A stretch of DNA of 64,000 nt, taken from positions 182,503-246,502 of the IMG/VR virus record IMGVR_UViG_3300042402_002564; one strand, given 5' to 3'. The position numbers were made by a program, and so were the translations under genes. Positions 41,982 through 63,480 of the stretch are shown piece by piece (the stretch's first letter is position 1; every line of letters begins with the position of its first letter). The notes beneath the pieces are model-generated. The model saw only the letters and a list, made by a program, of their open reading frames with translations. It had not been told where the DNA came from and ran no database searches.

Positions 41982-42038
41982 AAAATTAATATTTTTATAA
42001 TAAATAGGAGAAAGTGTTAACCAACTTTCTCCTTTTTT

Positions 42039-42458
42039 ATGTTTAATTTTGGTAAAAAGAAACCAAATATAAAACAGTATGCAATAATAGGGATAGTTCT
42101 TTCTTCTATCGTTGCGGTATTATCTCAGTGTTCTGGAGTATCTGAAAATAGCGTTTGGGATTTATTTGATGAAATTCAAAGAAAATATTTTCCACAAACT
42201 ATTCTTAATGAATTTATTATTAAAGATGATGAAAAATTAAACAGAAGAATAAAAAGAGATGTTGATAATGCTATTCAAAAAGTTACTCCAGAATATGATA
42301 GAATTATTGAAGAAGCAGATAAGAAGTATCAACCAAAAAAATTAGAAAAACCAGTGGATGATTCTGTTTGTTATACCGACGAGTGTAAATCGCTTGGAGG
42401 AGAAATTAGAATTTGTTCTCCTTGGATAGATTCTTGTAAAGAAACTAATATAAATTAA
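42039..42458 (+). CDS. Hypothetical membrane-anchored protein
   Basis: N-terminal hydrophobic helix; Cys-rich C-terminus. Confidence 0.6.
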   Translation: MFNFGKKKPNIKQYAIIGIVLSSIVAVLSQCSGVSENSVWDLFDEIQRKYFPQTILNEFIIKDDEKLNRRIKRDVDNAIQKVTPEYDRIIEEADKKYQPKKLEKPVDDSVCYTDECKSLGGEIRICSPWIDSCKETNIN

Positions 42459-42477
42459 AAAAGATACTTTAGACAAT

Positions 42478-42660
42478 ATGGAAGACATTAAAAAACAATA
42501 TCCAAGTCCATCAGATTTAAATAATCTATATGGACATACCGATTTGGAAGGATTTTCCAAATATCTTGGTGTAAATTATGATACTCTTCTTGAAATAAAT
42601 AGAAAGAATGCTGAAGTTATTCGAAAATCGGCAAAGGGGTTGACAGAGCAAGACGTTTAG
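42478..42660 (+). CDS. Small hypothetical protein
   Basis: 60 aa ORF; overlaps the -35 of the tmRNA promoter. Confidence 0.45.
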   Translation: MEDIKKQYPSPSDLNNLYGHTDLEGFSKYLGVNYDTLLEINRKNAEVIRKSAKGLTEQDV

Positions 42661-42668
42661 GGTACTAT
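42640..42668 (+). promoter_or_regulatory. Sigma70-type promoter for tmRNA/tRNA-Arg
   Basis: TTGACA-17 nt-TACTAT. Confidence 0.7.
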
Positions 42669-42674
42669 ATAGAT

Positions 42675-42911
42675 TGTTCAGGAGGAGAGATCCACTGGCA
42701 TTTCGGACTGGGGTTCGACTCCCCACAACTCCATAAATCAAGGGGTTGACAAGGTTTCGACGGGGTGTTATGATCTTATCTGTTGATGGAACAAACAACA
42801 AACGCCAACAAAATCGTGGCATTCTCTCGTAGCAAAGTTGCTACCTTAGTTTGAGAGACGGGGTGACGACTACCTTGTAATCCAAAGTCGCGGGCAGTGG
42901 AATGCTGCCAC
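42675..42911 (+). ncRNA. ssrA: Circularly permuted (two-piece) tmRNA, cyanobacterial type
   Basis: T-arm plus acceptor 3' strand CAACTCC-A (to 42733), 8-nt spacer, GGGGTTG..TTCGAC 5' end (42742), G3:U70; tag ANKIVAFSRSKVATLV* at 42804-42854; outer ends approximate. Confidence 0.9.
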
Positions 42912-42915
42912 TTAT

Positions 42916-42989
42916 GCCTCAGTAGCTCAGTGGACTAGAGCATCCGCCTTCTAAGCGGTTGGCCGCAGGTTCGAATCCTGCCTGAGGCG
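42916..42989 (+). tRNA. tRNA-Arg(UCU)
   Basis: Cloverleaf, anticodon TCT. Confidence 0.92.
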
Positions 42990-43317
42990 TTGACTTTTAA
43001 AATAAAAAGTCTTATAAATAATAACACTTAGGTCGAAAACAATGTCTTATCCAATGCCCAAACAGTTTAGTAATCTCGATTGCCGTTATTGGCATATTGA
43101 GGGTACTCCCCTGTTTGTGGATATGGATAAACATATGTAGTATGTAATCCATAAAAACAAAAAGACAGGGGAGAGAAACCAAAAAGTTTCCTCCCCTTTT
43201 TTGTTGCCTGTGACAGGTTCCTAAGTGTCCACCAATCTCCCCTAAGAGACCAAACGGTGGTATTCTAATCAAGTGGTCGAGAGAGACCACGATTTGCACC
43301 TTGACAATTTAACCCTT

Positions 43318-43390
43318 GGGTCTGTAACTCAGTTGGTAGAGTAGCGGGCTTTTAACCTGTAAGTCGTCGGTTCGAGCCCGACCAGACCCA
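43318..43390 (+). tRNA. tRNA-Lys(UUU)
   Basis: Cloverleaf, anticodon TTT. Confidence 0.92.
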
Positions 43391-43428
43391 TTGACCGCCA
43401 CAGTTCGGTCGTTAAACATAAACTGTTC

Positions 43429-43519
43429 GGGAGAGTGGCTACTGTTGGCAATATGTGTGGCTGCGGTCTGTAAAACCGTTACATCGGAACCATCGGGGGT
43501 TCAATTCCCTCCTCTCCCA
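43429..43519 (+). tRNA. tRNA-Tyr(GUA), atypical long D-loop
   Basis: gcggt-CTGTAAA-accgt, long variable arm, T-arm. Confidence 0.8.
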
Positions 43520-43523
43520 CCTT

Positions 43524-43596
43524 GACCCTATAGTGAAGTGGTCTATCACGCTACCCTGTCACGGTGGTATCACGGGTTCGAATCCCGTTAGGGTCG
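43524..43596 (+). tRNA. tRNA-Asp(GUC)
   Basis: Cloverleaf, anticodon GTC, G73. Confidence 0.92.
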
Positions 43597-43775
43597 TTGG
43601 GAGTCAGTATTCTAACTCCCACGCATTCTTCAGAGGTTGCCAGTTTGCAGAAGAATGTTGTAGTAATAACTGGAATTGGGGAGGGATTTCTAACCACCAT
43701 CGGATGATGGCAGGATTCATAAGGCTACGAAGCGTAATCCGTAAGTAACTTCGTGTGGGATACCCCTCCCATCAA

Positions 43776-43851
43776 GGTCCCATCGTCTAATTGGTCAGGA
43801 CGCGACCCTTTCAAGGTTGAAACGCGGGTTCAAACCCCGCTGGGACTACCA
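43776..43851 (+). tRNA. tRNA-Glu(UUC)
   Basis: Cloverleaf, anticodon TTC, CCA encoded. Confidence 0.92.
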
Positions 43852-43852
43852 A

Positions 43853-43929
43853 CGGAATGTAGCTCAGTTTGGTAGAGCTCTGGTTTTGGGAACCAGTTGT
43901 CGCAGGTTCGAATCCTGTCATTCCGACCA
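43853..43929 (+). tRNA. tRNA-Pro(UGG)
   Basis: Cloverleaf, anticodon TGG, CCA encoded. Confidence 0.93.
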
Positions 43930-44002
43930 CGGGGAATAGCTCAGTTGGTAGAGCACATGCCTGAAGAGCATGGTGTCGGTGGTTCAATTCCACCTTCCTC
44001 GG
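43930..44002 (+). tRNA. tRNA-Phe(GAA)
   Basis: catgc-CTGAAGA-gcatg. Confidence 0.88.
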
Positions 44003-44139
44003 CTTGGGTTGCTGCCCGATATGAGAAACACTCCTGTATTTCTAGGATACGGTAGGGTGAAAACTCGGAATTACCTCTGCCCCGTCTCTTGGGGATGCGA
44101 ATTGAGGAAAGGTAAAGGGAAGAGACAGCAACCCATATT

Positions 44140-44212
44140 GGAAACATAGCTTAGTTGGTAAAGCATTCGACTGATAATCGAAAGACCACTGGTTCGAGTC
44201 CAGTTGTTTCCA
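44140..44212 (+). tRNA. tRNA-Ile(GAU)
   Basis: Cloverleaf, anticodon GAT. Confidence 0.93.
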
Positions 44213-44299
44213 TAGGACTCCAGCAAGGTGCTTGCTAGGATATAAAAGACTGACGCCTCCCTCTTCAGAAAGAGTACCCAGCAGGTCAGCGTCCATTTT

Positions 44300-44371
44300 G
44301 GCAGTGTAGTTCAGTGGTAGAACAAGAGATTCATACCCTCTATGTCGGTAGTTCAATTCTACCCACTGCCT
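44300..44371 (+). tRNA. tRNA-Met(CAU)
   Basis: Cloverleaf, anticodon CAT. Confidence 0.82.
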
Positions 44372-44372
44372 T

Positions 44373-44443
44373 GTGTCGTTAGCCTAGTGGTAAGGCAGTG
44401 GTTTGTGGAACCACCTAGATGGGTTCAATTCCCATACGACACC
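44373..44443 (+). tRNA. tRNA-His(GUG)
   Basis: Anticodon GTG, C73. Confidence 0.88.
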
Positions 44444-44445
44444 CC

Positions 44446-44524
44446 GTTCAGGTGGCAGAGTGGTCGAATGCGGAAGTCTGCAAAACTTCTATTACCGTGG
44501 GTTCGAATCCCACCCTGAACTCCA
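44446..44524 (+). tRNA. tRNA-Cys(GCA)
   Basis: Anticodon GCA, U73, CCA. Confidence 0.92.
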
Positions 44525-44528
44525 AAAA

Positions 44529-44599
44529 GTTGGATTGGTGTAACGGTAGCACGACGGTCTCCAAAACCGTTAGTGGGAGTTCAAATCTCTCATCCTTCG
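44529..44599 (+). tRNA. tRNA-Trp(CCA), two acceptor-stem mismatches
   Basis: acggt-CTCCAAA-accgt; acceptor GTTGGAT/ATCCTTC. Confidence 0.75.
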
Positions 44600-44604
44600 C
44601 CTAT

Positions 44605-44677
44605 GCCCTCGTAACTCAGTGGCTAGAGTATCCGCCTTCTAAGCGGTTAGTCGTAGGTTCGAATCCTACCGAGGGTG
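44605..44677 (+). tRNA. tRNA-Arg(UCU), second copy
   Basis: Cloverleaf, anticodon TCT. Confidence 0.92.
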
Positions 44678-44681
44678 CTTT

Positions 44682-44755
44682 GTCCTCTTAACTCAGTGGA
44701 CCAGAGTGCTTGGCTACGAACCAAGAAGTCGCAAGTTCAAATCTTGCAGAGGACG
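44682..44755 (+). tRNA. tRNA-Arg(ACG)
   Basis: cttgg-CTACGAA-ccaag. Confidence 0.92.
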
Positions 44756-44850
44756 CTTGACAAACTTACAAAAGTTTGTTACTATATAATAGTGATAGAG
44801 GTTGAGTCCCTGTTACATCCTTATGAGGTGTATCACACTCAATCCATCAA

Positions 44851-44925
44851 AGTGGGGAAGTGTAACGGTTGCACAGAAGTCTCATAAGCTTCAAGAAGGA
44901 GGTTCAATTCCTCCCCCCGCCACCA
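44851..44925 (+). tRNA. tRNA-Met(CAU), initiator-like
   Basis: Anticodon CAT, 1:72 mismatch, CCA encoded. Confidence 0.78.
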
Positions 44926-44928
44926 CAT

Positions 44929-45001
44929 TCCCTTATAGCTCAATTGGCAGAGCACGGAGCTGTTAACTCTGGGGTTCCTGGTTCGAGTCCAGGTGGGGGA
45001 G
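44929..45001 (+). tRNA. tRNA-Asn(GUU)
   Basis: Cloverleaf, anticodon GTT, G73. Confidence 0.92.
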
Positions 45002-45133
45002 TTTTAATCTAGGAATAAAATGATTAATATTTTTAAAAAAATCTATTTTAATATAAAAGCATATATTGAATTTAAAAAAGTATCTAAAAAATGTAGAGAA
45101 GAAGACCCATACATCTATAAATAAAACTAAAAA

Positions 45134-45904
45134 ATGACTAATAATATATTAGTTACATTTGGATGTAGTTGGACTTTTGGTGAAGGATCTGGATATGTTG
45201 ATGGAATGGATCAAAATGAATATGAAGAAATTCAACAGGATGAAAAAATATGTTATGATAATTCTTGGAGAAAAATCATAGTAGATCATTATAATCTTAG
45301 ACACATAAACTTTTCTGTTCCAGGAAGTAGCAATCAAAGACAGTTTAAAACTGCTAGGGAATATTTTGTAACAGAAGAATGGAAAAAATTAATTAGTGAA
45401 CGCAGAAATAATGTTGTTGTTTTGTGGGGAATTACCAGTACATATAGAAATTATTTTTGGTGTAAAGATACTAATAGATACCAAAACATTTTTTATTCTA
45501 AATCTAAATATGATAGATACCAAGACAAATTGGCAAAAGCAATGATGTCATGGTCCTATGTTAAAGAGGTTGAGGAAGAAGTTGTAAAAAATGAAATATT
45601 ATTTTTTAATCAATATTTTAAATTGGTTGGTGTAAAAAATATGTGGTTTGATACTTTTAATTCTTTAGATTATAAAGAAAAATTTGATAATTTTTTAGAT
45701 CAATATAAAGAACAGAGAGATCTTTTATCGATGCTTTGTTATGAACATGCTAGAAAATTAAATGGCAGATTAGTTTTGAATAATAATTTTAAATATGCTG
45801 AAGAAAATGGATTAATAAATTTAATTAGTTTTCATCCTAAAAAAGAACAATATAAAATTATTGGTGAATATTTTATTAGAAAATTGAAAAAATACTTCAA
45901 ATAA
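45134..45904 (+). CDS. SGNH-hydrolase-like hypothetical protein
   Basis: FGCSWTFG block I, GSSN, C-terminal HP. Confidence 0.6.
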   Translation: MTNNILVTFGCSWTFGEGSGYVDGMDQNEYEEIQQDEKICYDNSWRKIIVDHYNLRHINFSVPGSSNQRQFKTAREYFVTEEWKKLISERRNNVVVLWGITSTYRNYFWCKDTNRYQNIFYSKSKYDRYQDKLAKAMMSWSYVKEVEEEVVKNEILFFNQYFKLVGVKNMWFDTFNSLDYKEKFDNFLDQYKEQRDLLSMLCYEHARKLNGRLVLNNNFKYAEENGLINLISFHPKKEQYKIIGEYFIRKLKKYFK

Positions 45905-45954
45905 ATCAATAAATAGTTGACAAAATAATTTGTCTCTGTTAAAATAAAATCATC

Positions 45955-46026
45955 GGGCGATTAACTCAGCGGTAGAGTGGCCTCCTTACAAGTGGTAAGT
46001 CACTGGTTCGATTCCAGTATCGCCCA
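45955..46026 (+). tRNA. tRNA-Val(UAC)
   Basis: Anticodon TAC; TTGACA promoter upstream. Confidence 0.9.
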
Positions 46027-46173
46027 TATATAAAATGAAGCATATATAACTTATGAAAGATAAAAAATTCAAAAAATTAATTCAAAAACCTTTAAGATTT
46101 CATCATCAAGATATCCATGAAGAACTTGATAGTATTAAATTATCATTAGCAGATATTAGGAGATTAATGGAAA

Positions 46174-46431
46174 ATGTTAGTAGTGAGATGCAAAGATTGC
46201 AACAAAGAGTTGACAAGTCATCCATCTAAAACTCAGTGTTGTGGATGTTCTAATATGATGACTGTCTGTGCTGATAACATATCAGCCATTGATTTAACTA
46301 AAGTAATTATTATTAATTCAAATAATAAAAAACCTCATAAAAAAACAAGTTTATTTTCTCCAGAAGAACTTGAGTATCAAGAATCTAGAAGAAAAAGAAA
46401 AGTTCGCAAATTAGATTTTGAAATACGTTAA
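46174..46431 (+). CDS. Small Zn-ribbon-like conserved cyanophage protein
   Basis: CKDC...CCGCSN; RRKRKVRKLDFEIR. Confidence 0.65.
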   Translation: MLVVRCKDCNKELTSHPSKTQCCGCSNMMTVCADNISAIDLTKVIIINSNNKKPHKKTSLFSPEELEYQESRRKRKVRKLDFEIR

Positions 46432-46471
46432 ATCTTAACTAAATAAGAAAATAAAGTTTTCTTATTAACTT

Positions 46472-46558
46472 GGAAGGGCAATCCGATTGGCGACGGAACC
46501 TGTCTTGAAAACAGTTGAGGTGTTAAAGCCCTTGGGGGTTCGACTCCCCCTCCTTCCG
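46472..46558 (+). tRNA. tRNA-Ser(UGA)
   Basis: Anticodon TGA, long variable arm, G73. Confidence 0.9.
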
Positions 46559-46657
46559 TTTAACAATTTTTTAATTTGTGTTATAAAATGAACACAATAC
46601 ATTGACGTTTAAAAATTAAAAACTATTATATAGTAGTACAACTACTTATAAACCCCA

Positions 46658-46813
46658 ATGGATGATCATACTTACCAAAATTGGGTGAAGATTAAAGAAA
46701 CCTTTGAGTCTTCTGGTAATACAAATAACATGTTTTATCGTAGGGCCTGTGAAATAGTAAAAACTAAAAGAGACCCTTTAGCAAAGTTTTTTGGTGATAC
46801 TAATAATGGATAA
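46658..46813 (+). CDS. Small hypothetical protein (MDDHTYQNWVKIK...)
   Basis: Clean ORF after a TTGACG promoter; below track cutoff. Confidence 0.55.
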   Translation: MDDHTYQNWVKIKETFESSGNTNNMFYRRACEIVKTKRDPLAKFFGDTNNG

Positions 46814-47044
46814 AACAATTATATCTGCAATAATAATTTTTACATTAATTGGTTTATTCATCAGATGGGGACTTACAAACGCATATGCGTAAGTAAAGAT
46901 AATTTAAATGGAGAGAAAGATGATTTTTCATATTGTAGAGACTCTTGCAGCGAGTCCAGTTTGGTTGTTCTTTTGCGGTTTTGGCTTGACAGTTGTTCCT
47001 TTTATGGGTATAATGATTATACACCGAGATAAATAATCTTATTA

Positions 47045-47118
47045 CGGGGTGTAGCTCAGTTTGGTAGAGCACTGCTTTTGGGAAGCAGGGGCCGTAGGTT
47101 CGAATCCTATCACCCCGA
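47045..47118 (+). tRNA. tRNA-Pro(UGG), second copy
   Basis: Cloverleaf, anticodon TGG. Confidence 0.92.
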
Positions 47119-47322
47119 TTAGTAAAATCTTTGTAATTTTACTATTTAAATTTTAGTTAATGATTTTTTTAAATGGAATCACAACAGGAAATTTCTAAAA
47201 TTGAATCTATAGATTTTACTAATGAGTCAAGTAAAGATGCATCAGAGACAGATATCAAAGAGTTGATAGAGGTCTTGACAAACCACAACGATGCATGTTA
47301 ACTTTGATTTGTTGAAACACAC

Positions 47323-47397
47323 GGGACTGTCGCCTATTGGTTAAGGCCCACTGCTTATAACGGTGTGAACTGAGTTCAATTCTCAGCAGTCCTACCA
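47323..47397 (+). tRNA. tRNA-Ile(UAU)
   Basis: cactg-CTTATAA-cggtg, CCA encoded. Confidence 0.88.
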
Positions 47398-47398
47398 A

Positions 47399-47470
47399 GG
47401 GAGTATAGCTTAATGGTTAGAGCGGCCTGCTTATAACGGGTTAGTCTGGGTTCAACTCCCAGTATTCCTA
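47399..47470 (+). tRNA. tRNA-Ile(UAU), second divergent copy
   Basis: gcctg-CTTATAA-cgggt. Confidence 0.88.
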
Positions 47471-47499
47471 TTGCTATTCGCTATTTGCGAATAACGAAT

Positions 47500-47572
47500 G
47501 CTCGTTTAGCCATCTGGTGAAGGCAGCGAACTCATAATTCGCCTCAGGAGAGTTCGATCCTCTCAACGAGCA
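47500..47572 (+). tRNA. tRNA-Met/Ile2(CAU)
   Basis: gcgaa-CTCATAA-ttcgc. Confidence 0.85.
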
Positions 47573-47649
47573 CTCGGACAGAATTTAATCTGTCCATCTT
47601 GACTTCTCCAAGTCAACCCCTTATAATATTAAGGTCAACATTCAAAACA

Positions 47650-48142: not shown

Positions 48143-48275
48143 AGTACTGGTGGAGTCAAATGACCCTCATTTTGGTTTCTTGCTTTTCCATTAAAAAGCA
48201 AGTGGTGCGGATGGGGAATTCTTTCTCCGCCTGGTTTCTTGCCTCCAGTTAAAGGGCAAGTGGCGAGCCTGAATT
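48143..48275 (+). ncRNA. manA-like structured RNA motif
   Basis: CTGGTGGAGTC..GACCC followed by two GGTTTCTTGC..CC..AAA..GCAAGTGG modules next to the tRNA cluster; recognised from memory, not searched. Confidence 0.6.
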
Positions 48276-48339
48276 TACTAAGATGGGTAAATCCCATCTT
48301 TTTTTATACCATAAAATAAATACATTTTTAATTCTTATT

Positions 48340-62088: not shown

Positions 62089-62279
62089 CTTTTTAAATAA
62101 ATCTACTTTATTTTATTTAGCAATACTATATCTTAATTATTATACGGTTATCAATATATCAACCCTTTATTTAGGATGTGCCAGTTGAGCAATTGTACCT
62201 ATTGACAGGGTTTGCTGACAATGTTATTATAAATACATCAAAACGTTAAGGAATGTAACACTTCTTTAATGTTTGTGAC

Positions 62280-62390
62280 TCCCGTTAACCGAGACCTATG
62301 GGAGTATAAATTACGTCTCTCATGCCCACACTGGGGGTGGTGTGGGGAATAACGTAACATCCAGTTCCCCCTGGACTTTTTACTTACCCT
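62280..62390 (+). ncRNA. PhotoRC-II-like structured psbA 5' leader
   Basis: AACCGAGACCTATGGG...CGTCTCTCAT...hairpin...CCAGTTCCCCCTGGAC..TACTTA directly before psbA; recognised from memory. Confidence 0.7.
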
Positions 62391-62400
62391 TTTAAACAAA

Positions 62401-63480
62401 ATGACTGCTACACTTTCACAACAACGACAATCAAATACTTGGGAACAATTCTGCAACTGGGTTACTTCAACCGACAACCGCCTCTATGTGGGTTGGTTCG
62501 GAGTCCTGATGATCCCTTGTCTGCTTGCTGCTACAACTTGTTTTATCATCGCATTCATCGGTGCTCCTCCTGTGGACATTGATGGTATCCGCGAACCTGT
62601 TGCTGGTTCACTCATGTACGGAAACAACATCATCTCTGGTGCTGTTATCCCTTCGTCCAATGCAATTGGACTGCACTTTTACCCCATCTGGGAAGCTGCT
62701 TCCCTAGATGAGTGGCTCTACAACGGTGGTCCTTTCCAACTCGTTGTCTTCCACTTCCTGATTGGTATCTATGCTTATATGGGTCGTGAGTGGGAACTTT
62801 CTTATCGTCTAGGTATGCGTCCTTGGATCTGCGTTGCATACTCTGCTCCTGTTGCTGCTGCTTCTGCAGTGTTCCTGGTCTATCCTTTCGGTCAAGGTTC
62901 TTTCTCTGATGCGATGCCTCTGGGTATCTCTGGCACCTTCAACTACATGCTGGTGTTCCAGGCTGAGCACAACATCCTGATGCACCCCTTCCACATGCTC
63001 GGTGTTGCTGGTGTATTTGGTGGTTCTCTGTTCAGTGCGATGCACGGTTCGCTTGTAACCTCTTCGCTTGTTCGTGAAACCACTGAAAACGAGTCGCAGA
63101 ACTACGGTTACAAGTTCGGTCAAGAAGAAGAGACTTATAACATCGTTGCTGCTCACGGTTATTTTGGTCGCCTTATTTTCCAATATGCTTCCTTTAATAA
63201 CTCCCGTTCTCTGCACTTCTTCCTTGCTGCTTGGCCTGTTGTAGGCATCTGGTTCACTGCTCTTGGTGTTTCTACGATGGCCTTCAATTTGAATGGCTTC
63301 AACTTTAATCAGAGCATTATGAGTTCTGAAGGTAAAGTTGTTAACACTTGGGCAGATGTGCTCAACCGTGCTGGTCTTGGTATGGAAGTTATGCACGAAA
63401 GGAACGCACACAACTTCCCTCTGGATCTTGCTGCTGCTGAGAACACTCCTGTTGCTCTCACTGCTCCTAGTATCGGTTGA
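62401..63480 (+). CDS. psbA: Photosystem II D1 protein
   Basis: Full D1 sequence ([33 protein letters not shown]); no intron. Confidence 0.99.

What the first reader, a model, noticed from the sequence alone, without database searches (positions are those of the whole stretch)
42640..42911. Phage-encoded two-piece (permuted) tmRNA with a rewired degradation tag
Seen: after a TTGACA-17-TACTAT promoter the tRNA-like 3' half (GGACTGGGGTTCGACTCCCCA-CAACTCC-A) comes first. An 8-nt spacer (TAAATCAA) follows, then the 5' half GGGGTTGACAAGGTTTCGAC with G3:U70. GGGGTGTTA and GATCTT of the coding piece can pair with TGGCATTTC and GAGATC of the acceptor piece. The tag frame reads ANKIVAFSRSKVATLV*. Known: Prochlorococcus/Synechococcus-clade tmRNAs are permuted and carry tags like ANKIVSFSR...AA; the terminal AA is the ClpX degron. 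Inference: a host-derived tmRNA whose tag ends -TLV could rescue ribosomes while redirecting or avoiding ClpXP proteolysis, or back up host tmRNA against RNase defences. No smpB is visible in the window.
Basis: partly seen in the sequence, partly recalled or inferred. Interest (0 to 1): 0.8.

Follow-up and report, generated by a model that had tools for sequence, protein, structure and literature searches.

The report
Cyanophage two-piece tmRNA, altered tag end
A freshwater cyanobacterial virus carries its own intact copy of the ribosome-rescue RNA (tmRNA) in the split form its hosts use; such viral copies were already listed, but its peptide tag has swapped the hosts' universal "-VAA" ending for a conserved "-LV".

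Summary
Window 42640-42911 holds a sigma-70-type promoter followed by a circularly permuted (two-piece) tmRNA gene of the picocyanobacterial type. ARAGORN calls it, and Rfam cyano_tmRNA scores 113 bits against a threshold of 70. The gene heads a 22-tRNA array in a T4-like cyanomyovirus that is common in lakes. The tRNA-like domain, helix P2, the tag helix, the 3' pseudoknot and the terminal hairpin are all supported by covariation across 40 host and viral sequences. The tag ANKIVAFSRSKVATLV is under purifying selection (pS 0.5-0.9, pN 0.1-0.27).

The "rewired tag" claim survives its own refutation test. All 119 host tags sampled end in -(V/I)AA, while 42 of 56 cyano-type viral tags do not. The -AA end was lost at least twice, and only in viral lineages. 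Viral tmRNAs lie outside the host clade, so this is an old phage lineage. No SmpB is encoded in the window or in any cultured cyanophage.

The existence of permuted tmRNAs in cyanophages (S-CRM01, S-SSM7, AG-345-P14) was already tabulated by Buchholz et al. 2022. The gene is therefore a new member of a known kind. I found no prior description of the systematic tag-end divergence. What that divergence does to proteolysis is untested.

The parts
42640..42668 (+). Sigma-70-type promoter: -35 TTGACA (42640-45), 17-nt spacer, -10 TACTAT (42663-68). The inferred transcription start is near 42675.
   Evidence: 10 of 12 consensus matches. It is conserved as TTGACA-N17-TA(C/G)TAT in relatives whose flanks otherwise differ. 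The start site is inferred, not mapped.
42675..42733 (+). Acceptor piece: P2 5' strand (42681-42705), T-arm (42709-42725), acceptor 3' strand CAACTCC (42726-32), discriminator A (42733). CCA is not encoded.
   Evidence: Rfam alignment, MFE fold, covariation: the T-arm and acceptor stem pair in 40 of 40 sequences. The next bases are TAA, so CCA must be added after transcription (sequence).
42734..42741 (+). Intervening spacer TAAATCAA, expected to be removed when the precursor is cut into two pieces.
   Evidence: Sequence. This position is the variable-length loop in hosts and phages (2-30 nt). Its removal is inferred from the known processing of two-piece tmRNAs.
42742..42911 (+). Coding piece: acceptor 5' strand GGGGTTG (42742-48, G3 pairs with U70), GGTTTCGAC D-loop analogue, P2 3' strand (42761-81), a 21-nt A-rich linker, the tag ORF, the pseudoknot and the terminal hairpin.
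   Evidence: One adapter-flanked 136-nt insert covering 42759-42894 is present in a lake metatranscriptome.
42804..42854 (+). Tag reading frame: GCC resume codon through TGA stop, encoding ANKIVAFSRSKVATLV*. The tag helix is at 42829-42844.
   Evidence: ARAGORN. The resume codon aligns with the host resume codon in the Rfam alignment. Codon analysis shows purifying selection.
42858..42890 (+). H-type pseudoknot after the stop codon: stem 1 pairs 42858-64 with 42872-78; stem 2 pairs 42867-71 with 42886-90.
   Evidence: stem 1 is 97% paired, and 4 of 5 stem-2 pairs show compensatory double changes across 23 host and viral sequences.
42893..42909 (+). Terminal hairpin of the coding piece (GGCAG...CTGCC).
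   Evidence: Four of its five pairs show compensatory changes.
42915..42990 (+). tRNA-Arg(TCT), 5 nt after the tmRNA. It is the first gene of the main tRNA array (42915-47573), which is probably co-transcribed; its 5' processing would define the 3' end of the coding piece.
   Evidence: tmRNA followed by tRNA-Arg(TCT) is also seen in S-CAM1, S-CAM3 and L253. An exact copy of the tRNA is present in a freshwater metatranscriptome. Co-transcription is inferred.

Best explanation
This is a functional, phage-encoded two-piece tmRNA (ssrA) of the picocyanobacterial type. It is probably transcribed early by host RNA polymerase from its own sigma-70-type promoter, together with the downstream tRNA array. 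Host tRNA-processing enzymes would then cut the precursor: RNase P at G1 of the coding piece and at the next tRNA, followed by 3' trimming and CCA addition at A73. That removes the 8-nt spacer and leaves an acceptor piece and a coding piece held together by the acceptor stem and helix P2. Host AlaRS would charge it through G3:U70. With host SmpB and EF-Tu it would enter ribosomes stalled on broken mRNAs, add ANKIVAFSRSKVATLV and release the ribosome. This keeps translation capacity up during infection, when host transcription, and so the supply of host tmRNA, is expected to fall and mRNA cleavage to rise. Shown here: gene integrity, covarying structure, selection on the tag peptide, an old phage lineage, and the absence of phage SmpB. 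Inferred: expression timing, processing, charging and ribosome rescue. The tag's -LV end replaces the host -VAA end and is itself conserved. This suggests that tagged products meet a different fate than with host tmRNA (weaker ClpXP recognition or another protease), but that step is speculative. The confidence of 0.8 applies to 'functional phage tmRNA used in ribosome rescue'; for 'the altered end changes the proteolytic fate' I would give about 0.35.
For: Detectors: ARAGORN and two Rfam models score well above threshold.

Structure:
- The acceptor stem and T-arm pair in 40 of 40 sequences, G3:U70 is invariant, one acceptor pair shows CG, GC, AU and UA, and P2 is 93% paired with 4 compensatory pairs. 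The covariation score is 0.315 against 0.16 for shuffles and at most 0.12 for slid controls.
- The 3' pseudoknot and terminal hairpin covary (0.43 against 0.19).
- The MFE fold reproduces the architecture, z = -2.1.

Tag:
- pS is 0.5-0.9 and pN is 0.11-0.27 between subfamilies.
- The terminal Leu-Val is kept through TTA/CTA/TTG and GTT/GTA codons, and the stop codon varies between TGA and TAG.

Genomic and environmental context:
- The promoter is conserved in relatives.
- The gene sits in or at the head of tRNA arrays in relatives.
- Identical copies occur in 4 IMG/VR contigs, and the phage is present in at least 15 lake metagenome runs.
- A 136-nt insert from the coding piece is present in a lake metatranscriptome.

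Tags and phylogeny:
- Host tags: 119 of 119 end in -(V/I)AA.
- Viral cyano-type tags: 42 of 56 do not end in -AA.
- Viral non-cyano permuted tags (alpha- and beta-proteobacterial-like): 57 of 61 keep -AA.
- Hosts form one clade with 100/99 support, and all viral copies lie outside it. L258, a viral copy with the host-like tag, is sister to the window's family with 100/100 support.
Against: - There is no direct evidence of processing into two pieces, aminoacylation or tagging. The RNA evidence is a single contig in a library that may contain DNA.
- The window's lineage lacks the small hairpin that hosts have between P2 and the resume codon (21 nt against 31 nt), and canonical tmRNAs rely on PK1 at that position.
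- No phage SmpB exists, so function depends on compatibility with the host protein.
- Part of the tag ORF lies in a conserved RNA helix, which confounds codon-based selection tests for the middle residues.
- Nothing is known about which protease reads -VAA or -LV in picocyanobacteria. In Synechocystis, tags ending in -V are weaker but still destabilising, so -LV could simply be a tolerated degron variant.
Confidence: 0.8

Rival explanations
1. Decoy or competitor. The phage RNA mainly competes with host tmRNA for SmpB, AlaRS or stalled ribosomes, so that rescue products (including truncated phage proteins) are not marked with the host's efficient -VAA degron. The benefit is the removal of host tagging, not added rescue capacity.
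For: The host -AA end was lost repeatedly, and only in phage lineages. There is no phage SmpB, so the two RNAs must share the host protein. A TLD-only phage tmRNA (DS6A) is reported to inhibit host tmRNA.
Against: The tag peptide, including its end, is under purifying selection. A pure decoy would not need this. Family B phage tmRNAs and L258 keep -VAA. This rival overlaps heavily with the main explanation and differs only in where the benefit lies.
Confidence: 0.15
2. Ordinary backup tmRNA with a drifted but equivalent tag. The -LV end is still read by the same host protease or proteases, so nothing is rewired.
For: ssrA variants ending in -AAV or -ASV are still destabilising in Synechocystis and E. 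coli. Non-polar C-termini are the general requirement for several ssrA-reading proteases (established knowledge from E. coli work on ClpXP, ClpAP, FtsH and Tsp).
Against: Hosts never drift: 119 of 119 keep -(V/I)AA across Prochlorococcus, Synechococcus, Cyanobium and Vulcanococcus. Phage lineages each fix a different conserved end: -LV, -AV, -TA, -TV, -PA, -CA. If the ends were equivalent, hosts should vary too.
Confidence: 0.3
3. Non-functional passenger: a decaying ssrA copy picked up with tRNA genes, or an attP-like fragment left over from integration into the host ssrA.
For: tmRNA genes are common integration sites, and prophages often carry ssrA fragments (many IMG/VR hits are standard tmRNAs at contig ends). 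The pre-tag hairpin has been lost.
Against: The gene is full length with all helices covarying. The tag is under purifying selection. It has its own conserved promoter. The lineage is old and widespread in lytic T4-like phages, and no integrase domain was found among the 33 ORFs scanned.
Confidence: 0.03

Closest known systems
Two-piece (permuted) tmRNA of marine and freshwater picocyanobacteria (Prochlorococcus, Synechococcus, Cyanobium; Rfam RF01851 cyano_tmRNA)
   Same: Same gene order (acceptor piece, short spacer, coding piece). Same T-arm and acceptor stem with G3:U70, same P2 helix, same resume position, same N-terminal tag core AN(K/N)IVxFSR, and the same post-tag pseudoknot and terminal hairpin.
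   Different: It is encoded by a virus. It lies outside the host clade, separated by a 0.47 branch with 100/99 support. The host's 5' leader hairpin is replaced by a promoter. The hairpin between P2 and the tag is missing. The tag helix is shortened. The tag ends in -TLV instead of -PVAA.
Permuted tmRNAs already listed in cyanophages S-CRM01, S-SSM7 and AG-345-P14 (Buchholz et al. 2022, PMC9004378, supplementary table)
   Same: Same kind of gene in the same virus family (Kyanoviridae). S-CRM01 belongs to the window's own tag family.
   Different: The window's sequence is only about 75% identical to S-CRM01 over 110 nt and 77% identical to its nearest IMG/VR relative. That paper lists only the presence of the genes and does not discuss tag ends, SmpB or structure. 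GenBank records leave these genes unannotated or call them hypothetical proteins.
Two-piece alpha-type tmRNA of OM43 phage Melnitz and pelagimyophages; one-piece tmRNAs of mycobacteriophages (Bxz1 group) and Bacillus phage G
   Same: Lytic phages that carry a complete ssrA, in Melnitz also behind an early promoter. The proposed role is to maintain the hijacked translation apparatus.
   Different: These belong to different tmRNA lineages. The viral non-cyano permuted tags in IMG/VR (alpha- and beta-proteobacterial-like) keep the canonical -AA end (57 of 61). Melnitz has a glutamine riboswitch, and none is found next to the tmRNA here.
Bacterial tmRNAs whose tags naturally lack the -LAA end (e.g. 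Mycoplasma tags read by Lon; from my own knowledge, not tested here)
   Same: A precedent that changing the tag end goes with a change in the protease that reads it.
   Different: In those cases the whole host lineage changed both tag and protease. Here only the virus changes the tag, while the host keeps -VAA.

Membership tests
tmRNA, permuted cyanobacterial type (RF01851 / RF04321) | Covariance-model score at or above the curated gathering threshold | tested here: met
   RF01851 gives 113.3 bits against GA 70; RF04321 gives 87.1 bits against GA 47. ARAGORN reports tmRNA*.
tmRNA, permuted cyanobacterial type | tRNA-like domain: 7-bp acceptor stem with G3:U70 (alanine identity), T-arm with a TTCGA loop, discriminator A | tested here: met
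   both helices pair in 40 of 40 sequences, the G:U pair is invariant, and compensatory changes occur in both helices.
tmRNA, permuted cyanobacterial type | Circular permutation: the acceptor 3' strand lies upstream of the 5' strand, joined by a short removable loop, and helix P2 holds the two pieces together | tested here: met
   Order and 8-nt spacer. P2 is 93% paired with 4 compensatory pairs. The MFE fold agrees.
tmRNA, permuted cyanobacterial type | Tag reading frame that starts at an Ala resume codon and ends at a stop codon, and that is translated | tested here: met
   The frame runs 42804-42854 and aligns with the host frame. pS is much greater than pN, which indicates selection on the peptide. 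Translation itself was not observed.
tmRNA, permuted cyanobacterial type | Pseudoknot(s) flanking the tag | tested here: inconclusive
   The post-tag pseudoknot is present and covaries. The host hairpin upstream of the tag is absent in this lineage.
tmRNA, permuted cyanobacterial type | Processing into two RNAs, CCA addition, alanylation, and SmpB-dependent entry into stalled ribosomes | not testable with these tools
   The only RNA evidence is one 136-nt metatranscriptome insert inside the coding piece. No phage SmpB exists.
Canonical ssrA degron (ClpX-type C-terminal -AA) | The tag ends in Ala-Ala-COOH | tested here: not met
   The window tag ends in -TLV. All 119 host tags end in -(V/I)AA.
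Recent host-to-phage gene capture (auxiliary gene nested within the host clade) | The viral copy nests inside the diversity of extant host sequences | tested here: not met
   Hosts are monophyletic relative to all viral copies, with 100/99 support and 98% of bootstrap trees.

The most novel reading that the evidence does not exclude
Cyanophage tmRNA lineages have repeatedly and specifically replaced the host's invariant ClpX-type -VAA degron with other conserved ends (-LV, -AV, -TA/-TV/-PA, -CA). On this reading, the virus rescues stalled ribosomes while reprogramming what happens to the rescued products: sparing them, degrading them more slowly, or sending them to another protease. That would be a previously unrecognised layer of viral takeover of host protein quality control.
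Probability: 0.3. Interest if true: 0.65.

Novelty: new member of a known kind. Interest (0 to 1): 0.45.

Why it matters
tmRNA is the main bacterial ribosome-rescue system, and its tag is the textbook example of a degradation signal. Widespread cyanophages of lakes and oceans keep their own tmRNA over long evolutionary time, use the host's SmpB, and systematically abandon the host's tag ending. This gives a natural experiment on which part of trans-translation (ribosome release or product destruction) matters during infection of the planet's most abundant phototrophs. Practically, it also shows that this gene is missed or mis-annotated as a protein in at least six cultured cyanophage genomes.

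Tried and rejected
- Megablast of the region against GenBank phages hit only a tRNA-Arg in Salmonella phages, so the window's phage is not deposited.
- RNA evidence: two run searches and one read-laying gave a single coding-piece insert plus tRNA contigs. This is too thin to show two-piece processing or RNA ends.
- A second promoter-like site inside the coding piece (TTGACA-17-TATGAT, 11 of 12 matches, 42746-74) was rejected as chance, because relatives have TTGCCA there.
- The terminator-like hairpin at 42829-44 is the tag helix, not a terminator.
- SmpB search: Pfam on 33 SmpB-sized ORFs, six-frame tblastn of E. coli SmpB on the window (best E = 2.4), and tblastn against 50,697 phage records (68 hits, none a cyanophage).
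- The integration-remnant idea was rejected: the gene is full length, no integrase domain was found among the ORFs scanned, and the phage is a lytic T4-like type.
- Adding the cultured isolates to the tree failed for 6 of 7, because my junction pattern was too strict. Their placement was therefore not tested.
- Literature searches for phage tmRNA tags, ClpXP and trans-translation in cyanophages found no prior treatment.

Full report

Yes.
- The -35 box TTGACA is at 42640-45, followed by a 17-nt spacer and the -10 box TACTAT at 42663-68.
- The T-arm and acceptor 3' strand end at discriminator A42733.
- The 8-nt spacer TAAATCAA is at 42734-41.
- The acceptor 5' strand GGGGTTG starts at 42742 and is followed by ACAAGGTTTCGAC.
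- The tag frame GCC...GTT TGA runs 42804-42854 and encodes ANKIVAFSRSKVATLV*.

ARAGORN calls a permuted tmRNA with exactly this tag. Rfam cyano_tmRNA scores 113.3 bits (gathering score 70, E = 7e-30) and the merged tmRNA_permuted model scores 87.1 bits (gathering score 47). The promoter scanner scores the promoter at 10 of 12 consensus positions. An independent minimum-free-energy fold of 42675-42911 reproduces them, along with the T-arm, the acceptor stem, the tag helix and both 3' hairpins (z = -2.1).

**2. What genome is this?**

The window has 24 tRNA genes, a wcaG RNA and a PhotoRC-II element in front of psbA. Pfam finds T4-like replication and regulation proteins such as RegA, gp45 and the clamp loader. 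The best nucleotide matches are cyanomyoviruses at about 77% identity, with S-SRM01 nearest, so the phage itself is not deposited. Four IMG/VR contigs carry an identical tmRNA region, one of them 246.5 kb long. Between 74% and 99% of the sampled words of window 42000-44000 occur in at least 15 lake-water or freshwater metagenome runs from at least 12 studies. This is therefore a large T4-like cyanomyovirus that is common in lakes.

**3. Is the RNA structurally intact?**

I aligned 40 sequences (12 hosts, 28 viral) over the tRNA-like domain and P2 and counted pairs for the Rfam-derived structure.
- The acceptor stem and T-arm are paired in every sequence.
- G3:U70 is invariant.
- One acceptor pair occurs as CG, GC, AU and UA.
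- Two T-arm pairs flip.
- The inner P2 helix is 93% paired, with four compensatory pairs.
- The covariation score is 0.315, against 0.16 for shuffles and at most 0.12 for slid controls.

For the 3' domain I used 23 sequences.
- Pseudoknot stem 1 is 97% paired.
- Four of five pseudoknot stem-2 pairs change on both sides.
- The terminal hairpin covaries.
- The covariation score is 0.43, against 0.19 for shuffles.

There is one structural difference from hosts. The window's lineage has only a 21-22-nt A-rich linker between P2 and the resume codon, where hosts have 31 nt containing a small hairpin. CCA is not encoded, because TAA follows A73.

**4. Is the tag translated and constrained?**

Ten 16-codon tags of the window's family differ mostly at synonymous sites. 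Between subfamilies, pS is 0.5-0.9 and pN is 0.11-0.27. Arg is encoded by CGT, CGC or AGG. The terminal Leu is encoded by TTA, CTA or TTG, and the terminal Val by GTT or GTA. The stop codon is TGA or TAG. The N-terminal ANxIVAFSR and the terminal LV are kept, while the middle residues vary. Some of that middle variation is compensatory within the tag helix, so the codon test is cleanest for the two ends.

**5. Is the tag "rewired" relative to hosts?**

I scanned one genome per species for the permuted junction, using a pattern that constrains only the tRNA-like domain and not the tag.
- All 119 permuted host tags end in -(V/I)AA. The consensus is AN(K/N)IV(S/R/A)FSRQ(T/A/P)APVAA.
- In IMG/VR, 56 cyano-type permuted tmRNAs were found, and 42 of them do not end in -AA.
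- By contrast, 57 of 61 viral permuted tmRNAs of the non-cyano types (alpha- and beta-proteobacterial-like) keep -AA.

The viral cyano-type tags fall into families.
- Family A, the window's: ...SK(V/S/T)(A/T)(T/A)LV, ...TS(V/L)PSLV, ...RRTAVAV, and ...SLVAAL in S-CRM01.
- Family B: an N-terminally extended tag ending in -STVAA.
- Family C: extended tags ending in -ELATA, -ELVTA, -EMVPA or -LATV.
- Two host-like tags: L258 and L018.

Cultured phages fit these families.
- S-SSM7 (and by similarity S-SSM6a, not read directly) and Sf-FS3 belong to family C.
- S-CAM1 and S-CAM3 belong to family B.
- S-CBWM1 ends in -VSCA.

**6. Origin**

In a maximum-likelihood tree of 68 tmRNA cores, the 36 host rows form one clade with 100/99 support on a 0.47 branch, and every viral sequence lies outside it (98/99). 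The window's family is a clade with 98/92 support. Its sister, with 100/100 support, is L258. That contig's flanks match marine T4-like cyanophage genomes, and it still has the host-type tag ANNIVSFSRQAAPVAA. The -LV end therefore arose inside a phage lineage. On the tree the "-AA end" state needs at least four changes, two of which are forced by strongly supported branches. All of them are among viruses. The tree is unrooted and the RNA is short, and the S-CRM01, window and AVAV branches are long, so the exact number of events is uncertain.

**7. Partners and expression**

No SmpB is encoded.
- Pfam found none in 33 ORFs of 59-256 aa.
- Six-frame tblastn of E. coli SmpB on the window gives a best E-value of 2.4.
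- The same query finds SmpB in 68 of 50,697 phage records, down to about 40% identity. None is a cyanophage, even though complete genomes of S-CRM01, S-SSM7, S-CAM1, S-CAM3 and S-CBWM1 are in the collection.

The phage RNA must therefore use host SmpB, AlaRS, EF-Tu and processing enzymes.

The promoter is conserved in the closest subfamilies. In other relatives the gene follows a tRNA directly. In most relatives it lies inside a tRNA array. Here it heads the array, 5 nt before tRNA-Arg(TCT).

Expression evidence is thin. One adapter-flanked 136-nt insert covering 42759-42894 (4 mismatches, the one inside the tag being synonymous) is present in a lake metatranscriptome. An exact tRNA-Arg contig is present in another. 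The tool warns that such libraries can contain DNA.

**8. Mechanism**

The best-supported reading is a working tmRNA that supplements or replaces the host's during infection. Gene integrity, covariation, peptide-level selection and long persistence in lytic phages are shown here. Early transcription, RNase P and 3' processing, CCA addition, alanylation and SmpB-dependent rescue follow from established knowledge of two-piece tmRNAs (Keiler et al. 2000 and Sharkady & Williams 2004, as cited) and were not observed.

The consequence of the -LV end is inference only. In Synechocystis and E. coli, ssrA variants ending in -ASV or -AAV are weaker degrons than -LVA. A slower or different proteolytic fate is therefore plausible, but so is continued recognition.

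**9. Novelty**

Phage tmRNAs have been known since the Bxz1-type mycobacteriophages. A 2022 survey counted 53 two-piece tmRNAs among 18,146 phage genomes, and its table lists S-CRM01, S-SSM7 and AG-345-P14. The tmRNA database pipeline was also applied to viral genomes. The gene in the window is thus a new member of a known kind.

I found no description of the following points in the searchable literature:
- host tags are invariant at -VAA, while cyanophage tags have repeatedly moved to other conserved ends;
- the phage genes form old lineages outside the host clade;
- these phages have no SmpB;
- the window's lineage is structurally reduced.

These points are modestly new and directly testable.

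**10. Verdict**

Interest is moderate (0.45): this is a solid, widespread and under-annotated viral tmRNA with an intriguing but functionally untested tag change.

Noticed in passing
L295:633-851 (S-SSM7 SSSM7_025); L296:842-1051 (Sf-FS3 SfFS3_24); L297:559-699 (S-CAM3 S250808_204); L298, L299 and L001 are unannotated: GenBank records of at least six cultured cyanophages annotate the tmRNA region as a 'hypothetical protein' CDS or leave it blank. ARAGORN and Rfam find a permuted tmRNA in all of them (109-143 bits; S-CRM01 74 bits).
   Followed up: yes
window 42746-42774: A second, even better sigma-70-like match (TTGACA-17-TATGAT with an upstream TG, 11 of 12) lies inside the coding piece. It arises from the acceptor strand GGGGTTGACA. 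It is not conserved in relatives (TTGCCA), so it is probably chance.
   Followed up: partly
window 42782-42803; compare L131, L223, L121: The window's tmRNA lineage (including L258 and S-CRM01) lacks the small hairpin (GCTC-GGTAA-GAGC) that hosts have between P2 and the resume codon. A 21-22-nt A-rich linker replaces the hosts' 31 nt.
   Followed up: partly
L096, L109, L073, L253 (IMG/VR); L295-L298 (isolates): Viral tag families B and C have an extra hairpin before the conserved ANNIVAFSR codons. ARAGORN reads it as an N-terminal extension A(K/N)TSDTA. Whether translation resumes at the upstream or the downstream Ala codon is unclear.
   Followed up: no
window 43429-43521: ARAGORN calls a 93-nt tRNA-Arg(GCG) here, but Rfam's tRNA model reports no match at this position. 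It may be a false call or an unusual, interrupted tRNA.
   Followed up: no
window 46472-46557: Rfam just passes the tRNA-Sec threshold (48.8 bits against 47), while ARAGORN calls tRNA-Ser(TGA). It is most likely a long-arm serine tRNA.
   Followed up: no
window 47323-47470: There are two adjacent tRNA-Ile genes with the rare anticodon TAT (reading AUA directly), plus three tRNA-Met(CAT)-type genes in the array.
   Followed up: no
window 48171-48274 and 62266-62360; L023:2452-2659: A wcaG RNA lies upstream of the ORF at 48283, and a PhotoRC-II RNA lies in front of psbA (62401-63480). A relative (L023) carries a manA RNA inside its tRNA array.
   Followed up: no
L299 (S-CBWM1, genus Aokuangvirus): A cyano-type permuted tmRNA (tag ANKIVAFHRQAVSCA) is also present in a cyanophage whose record does not place it in Kyanoviridae. 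The gene is therefore not confined to one virus family.
   Followed up: partly
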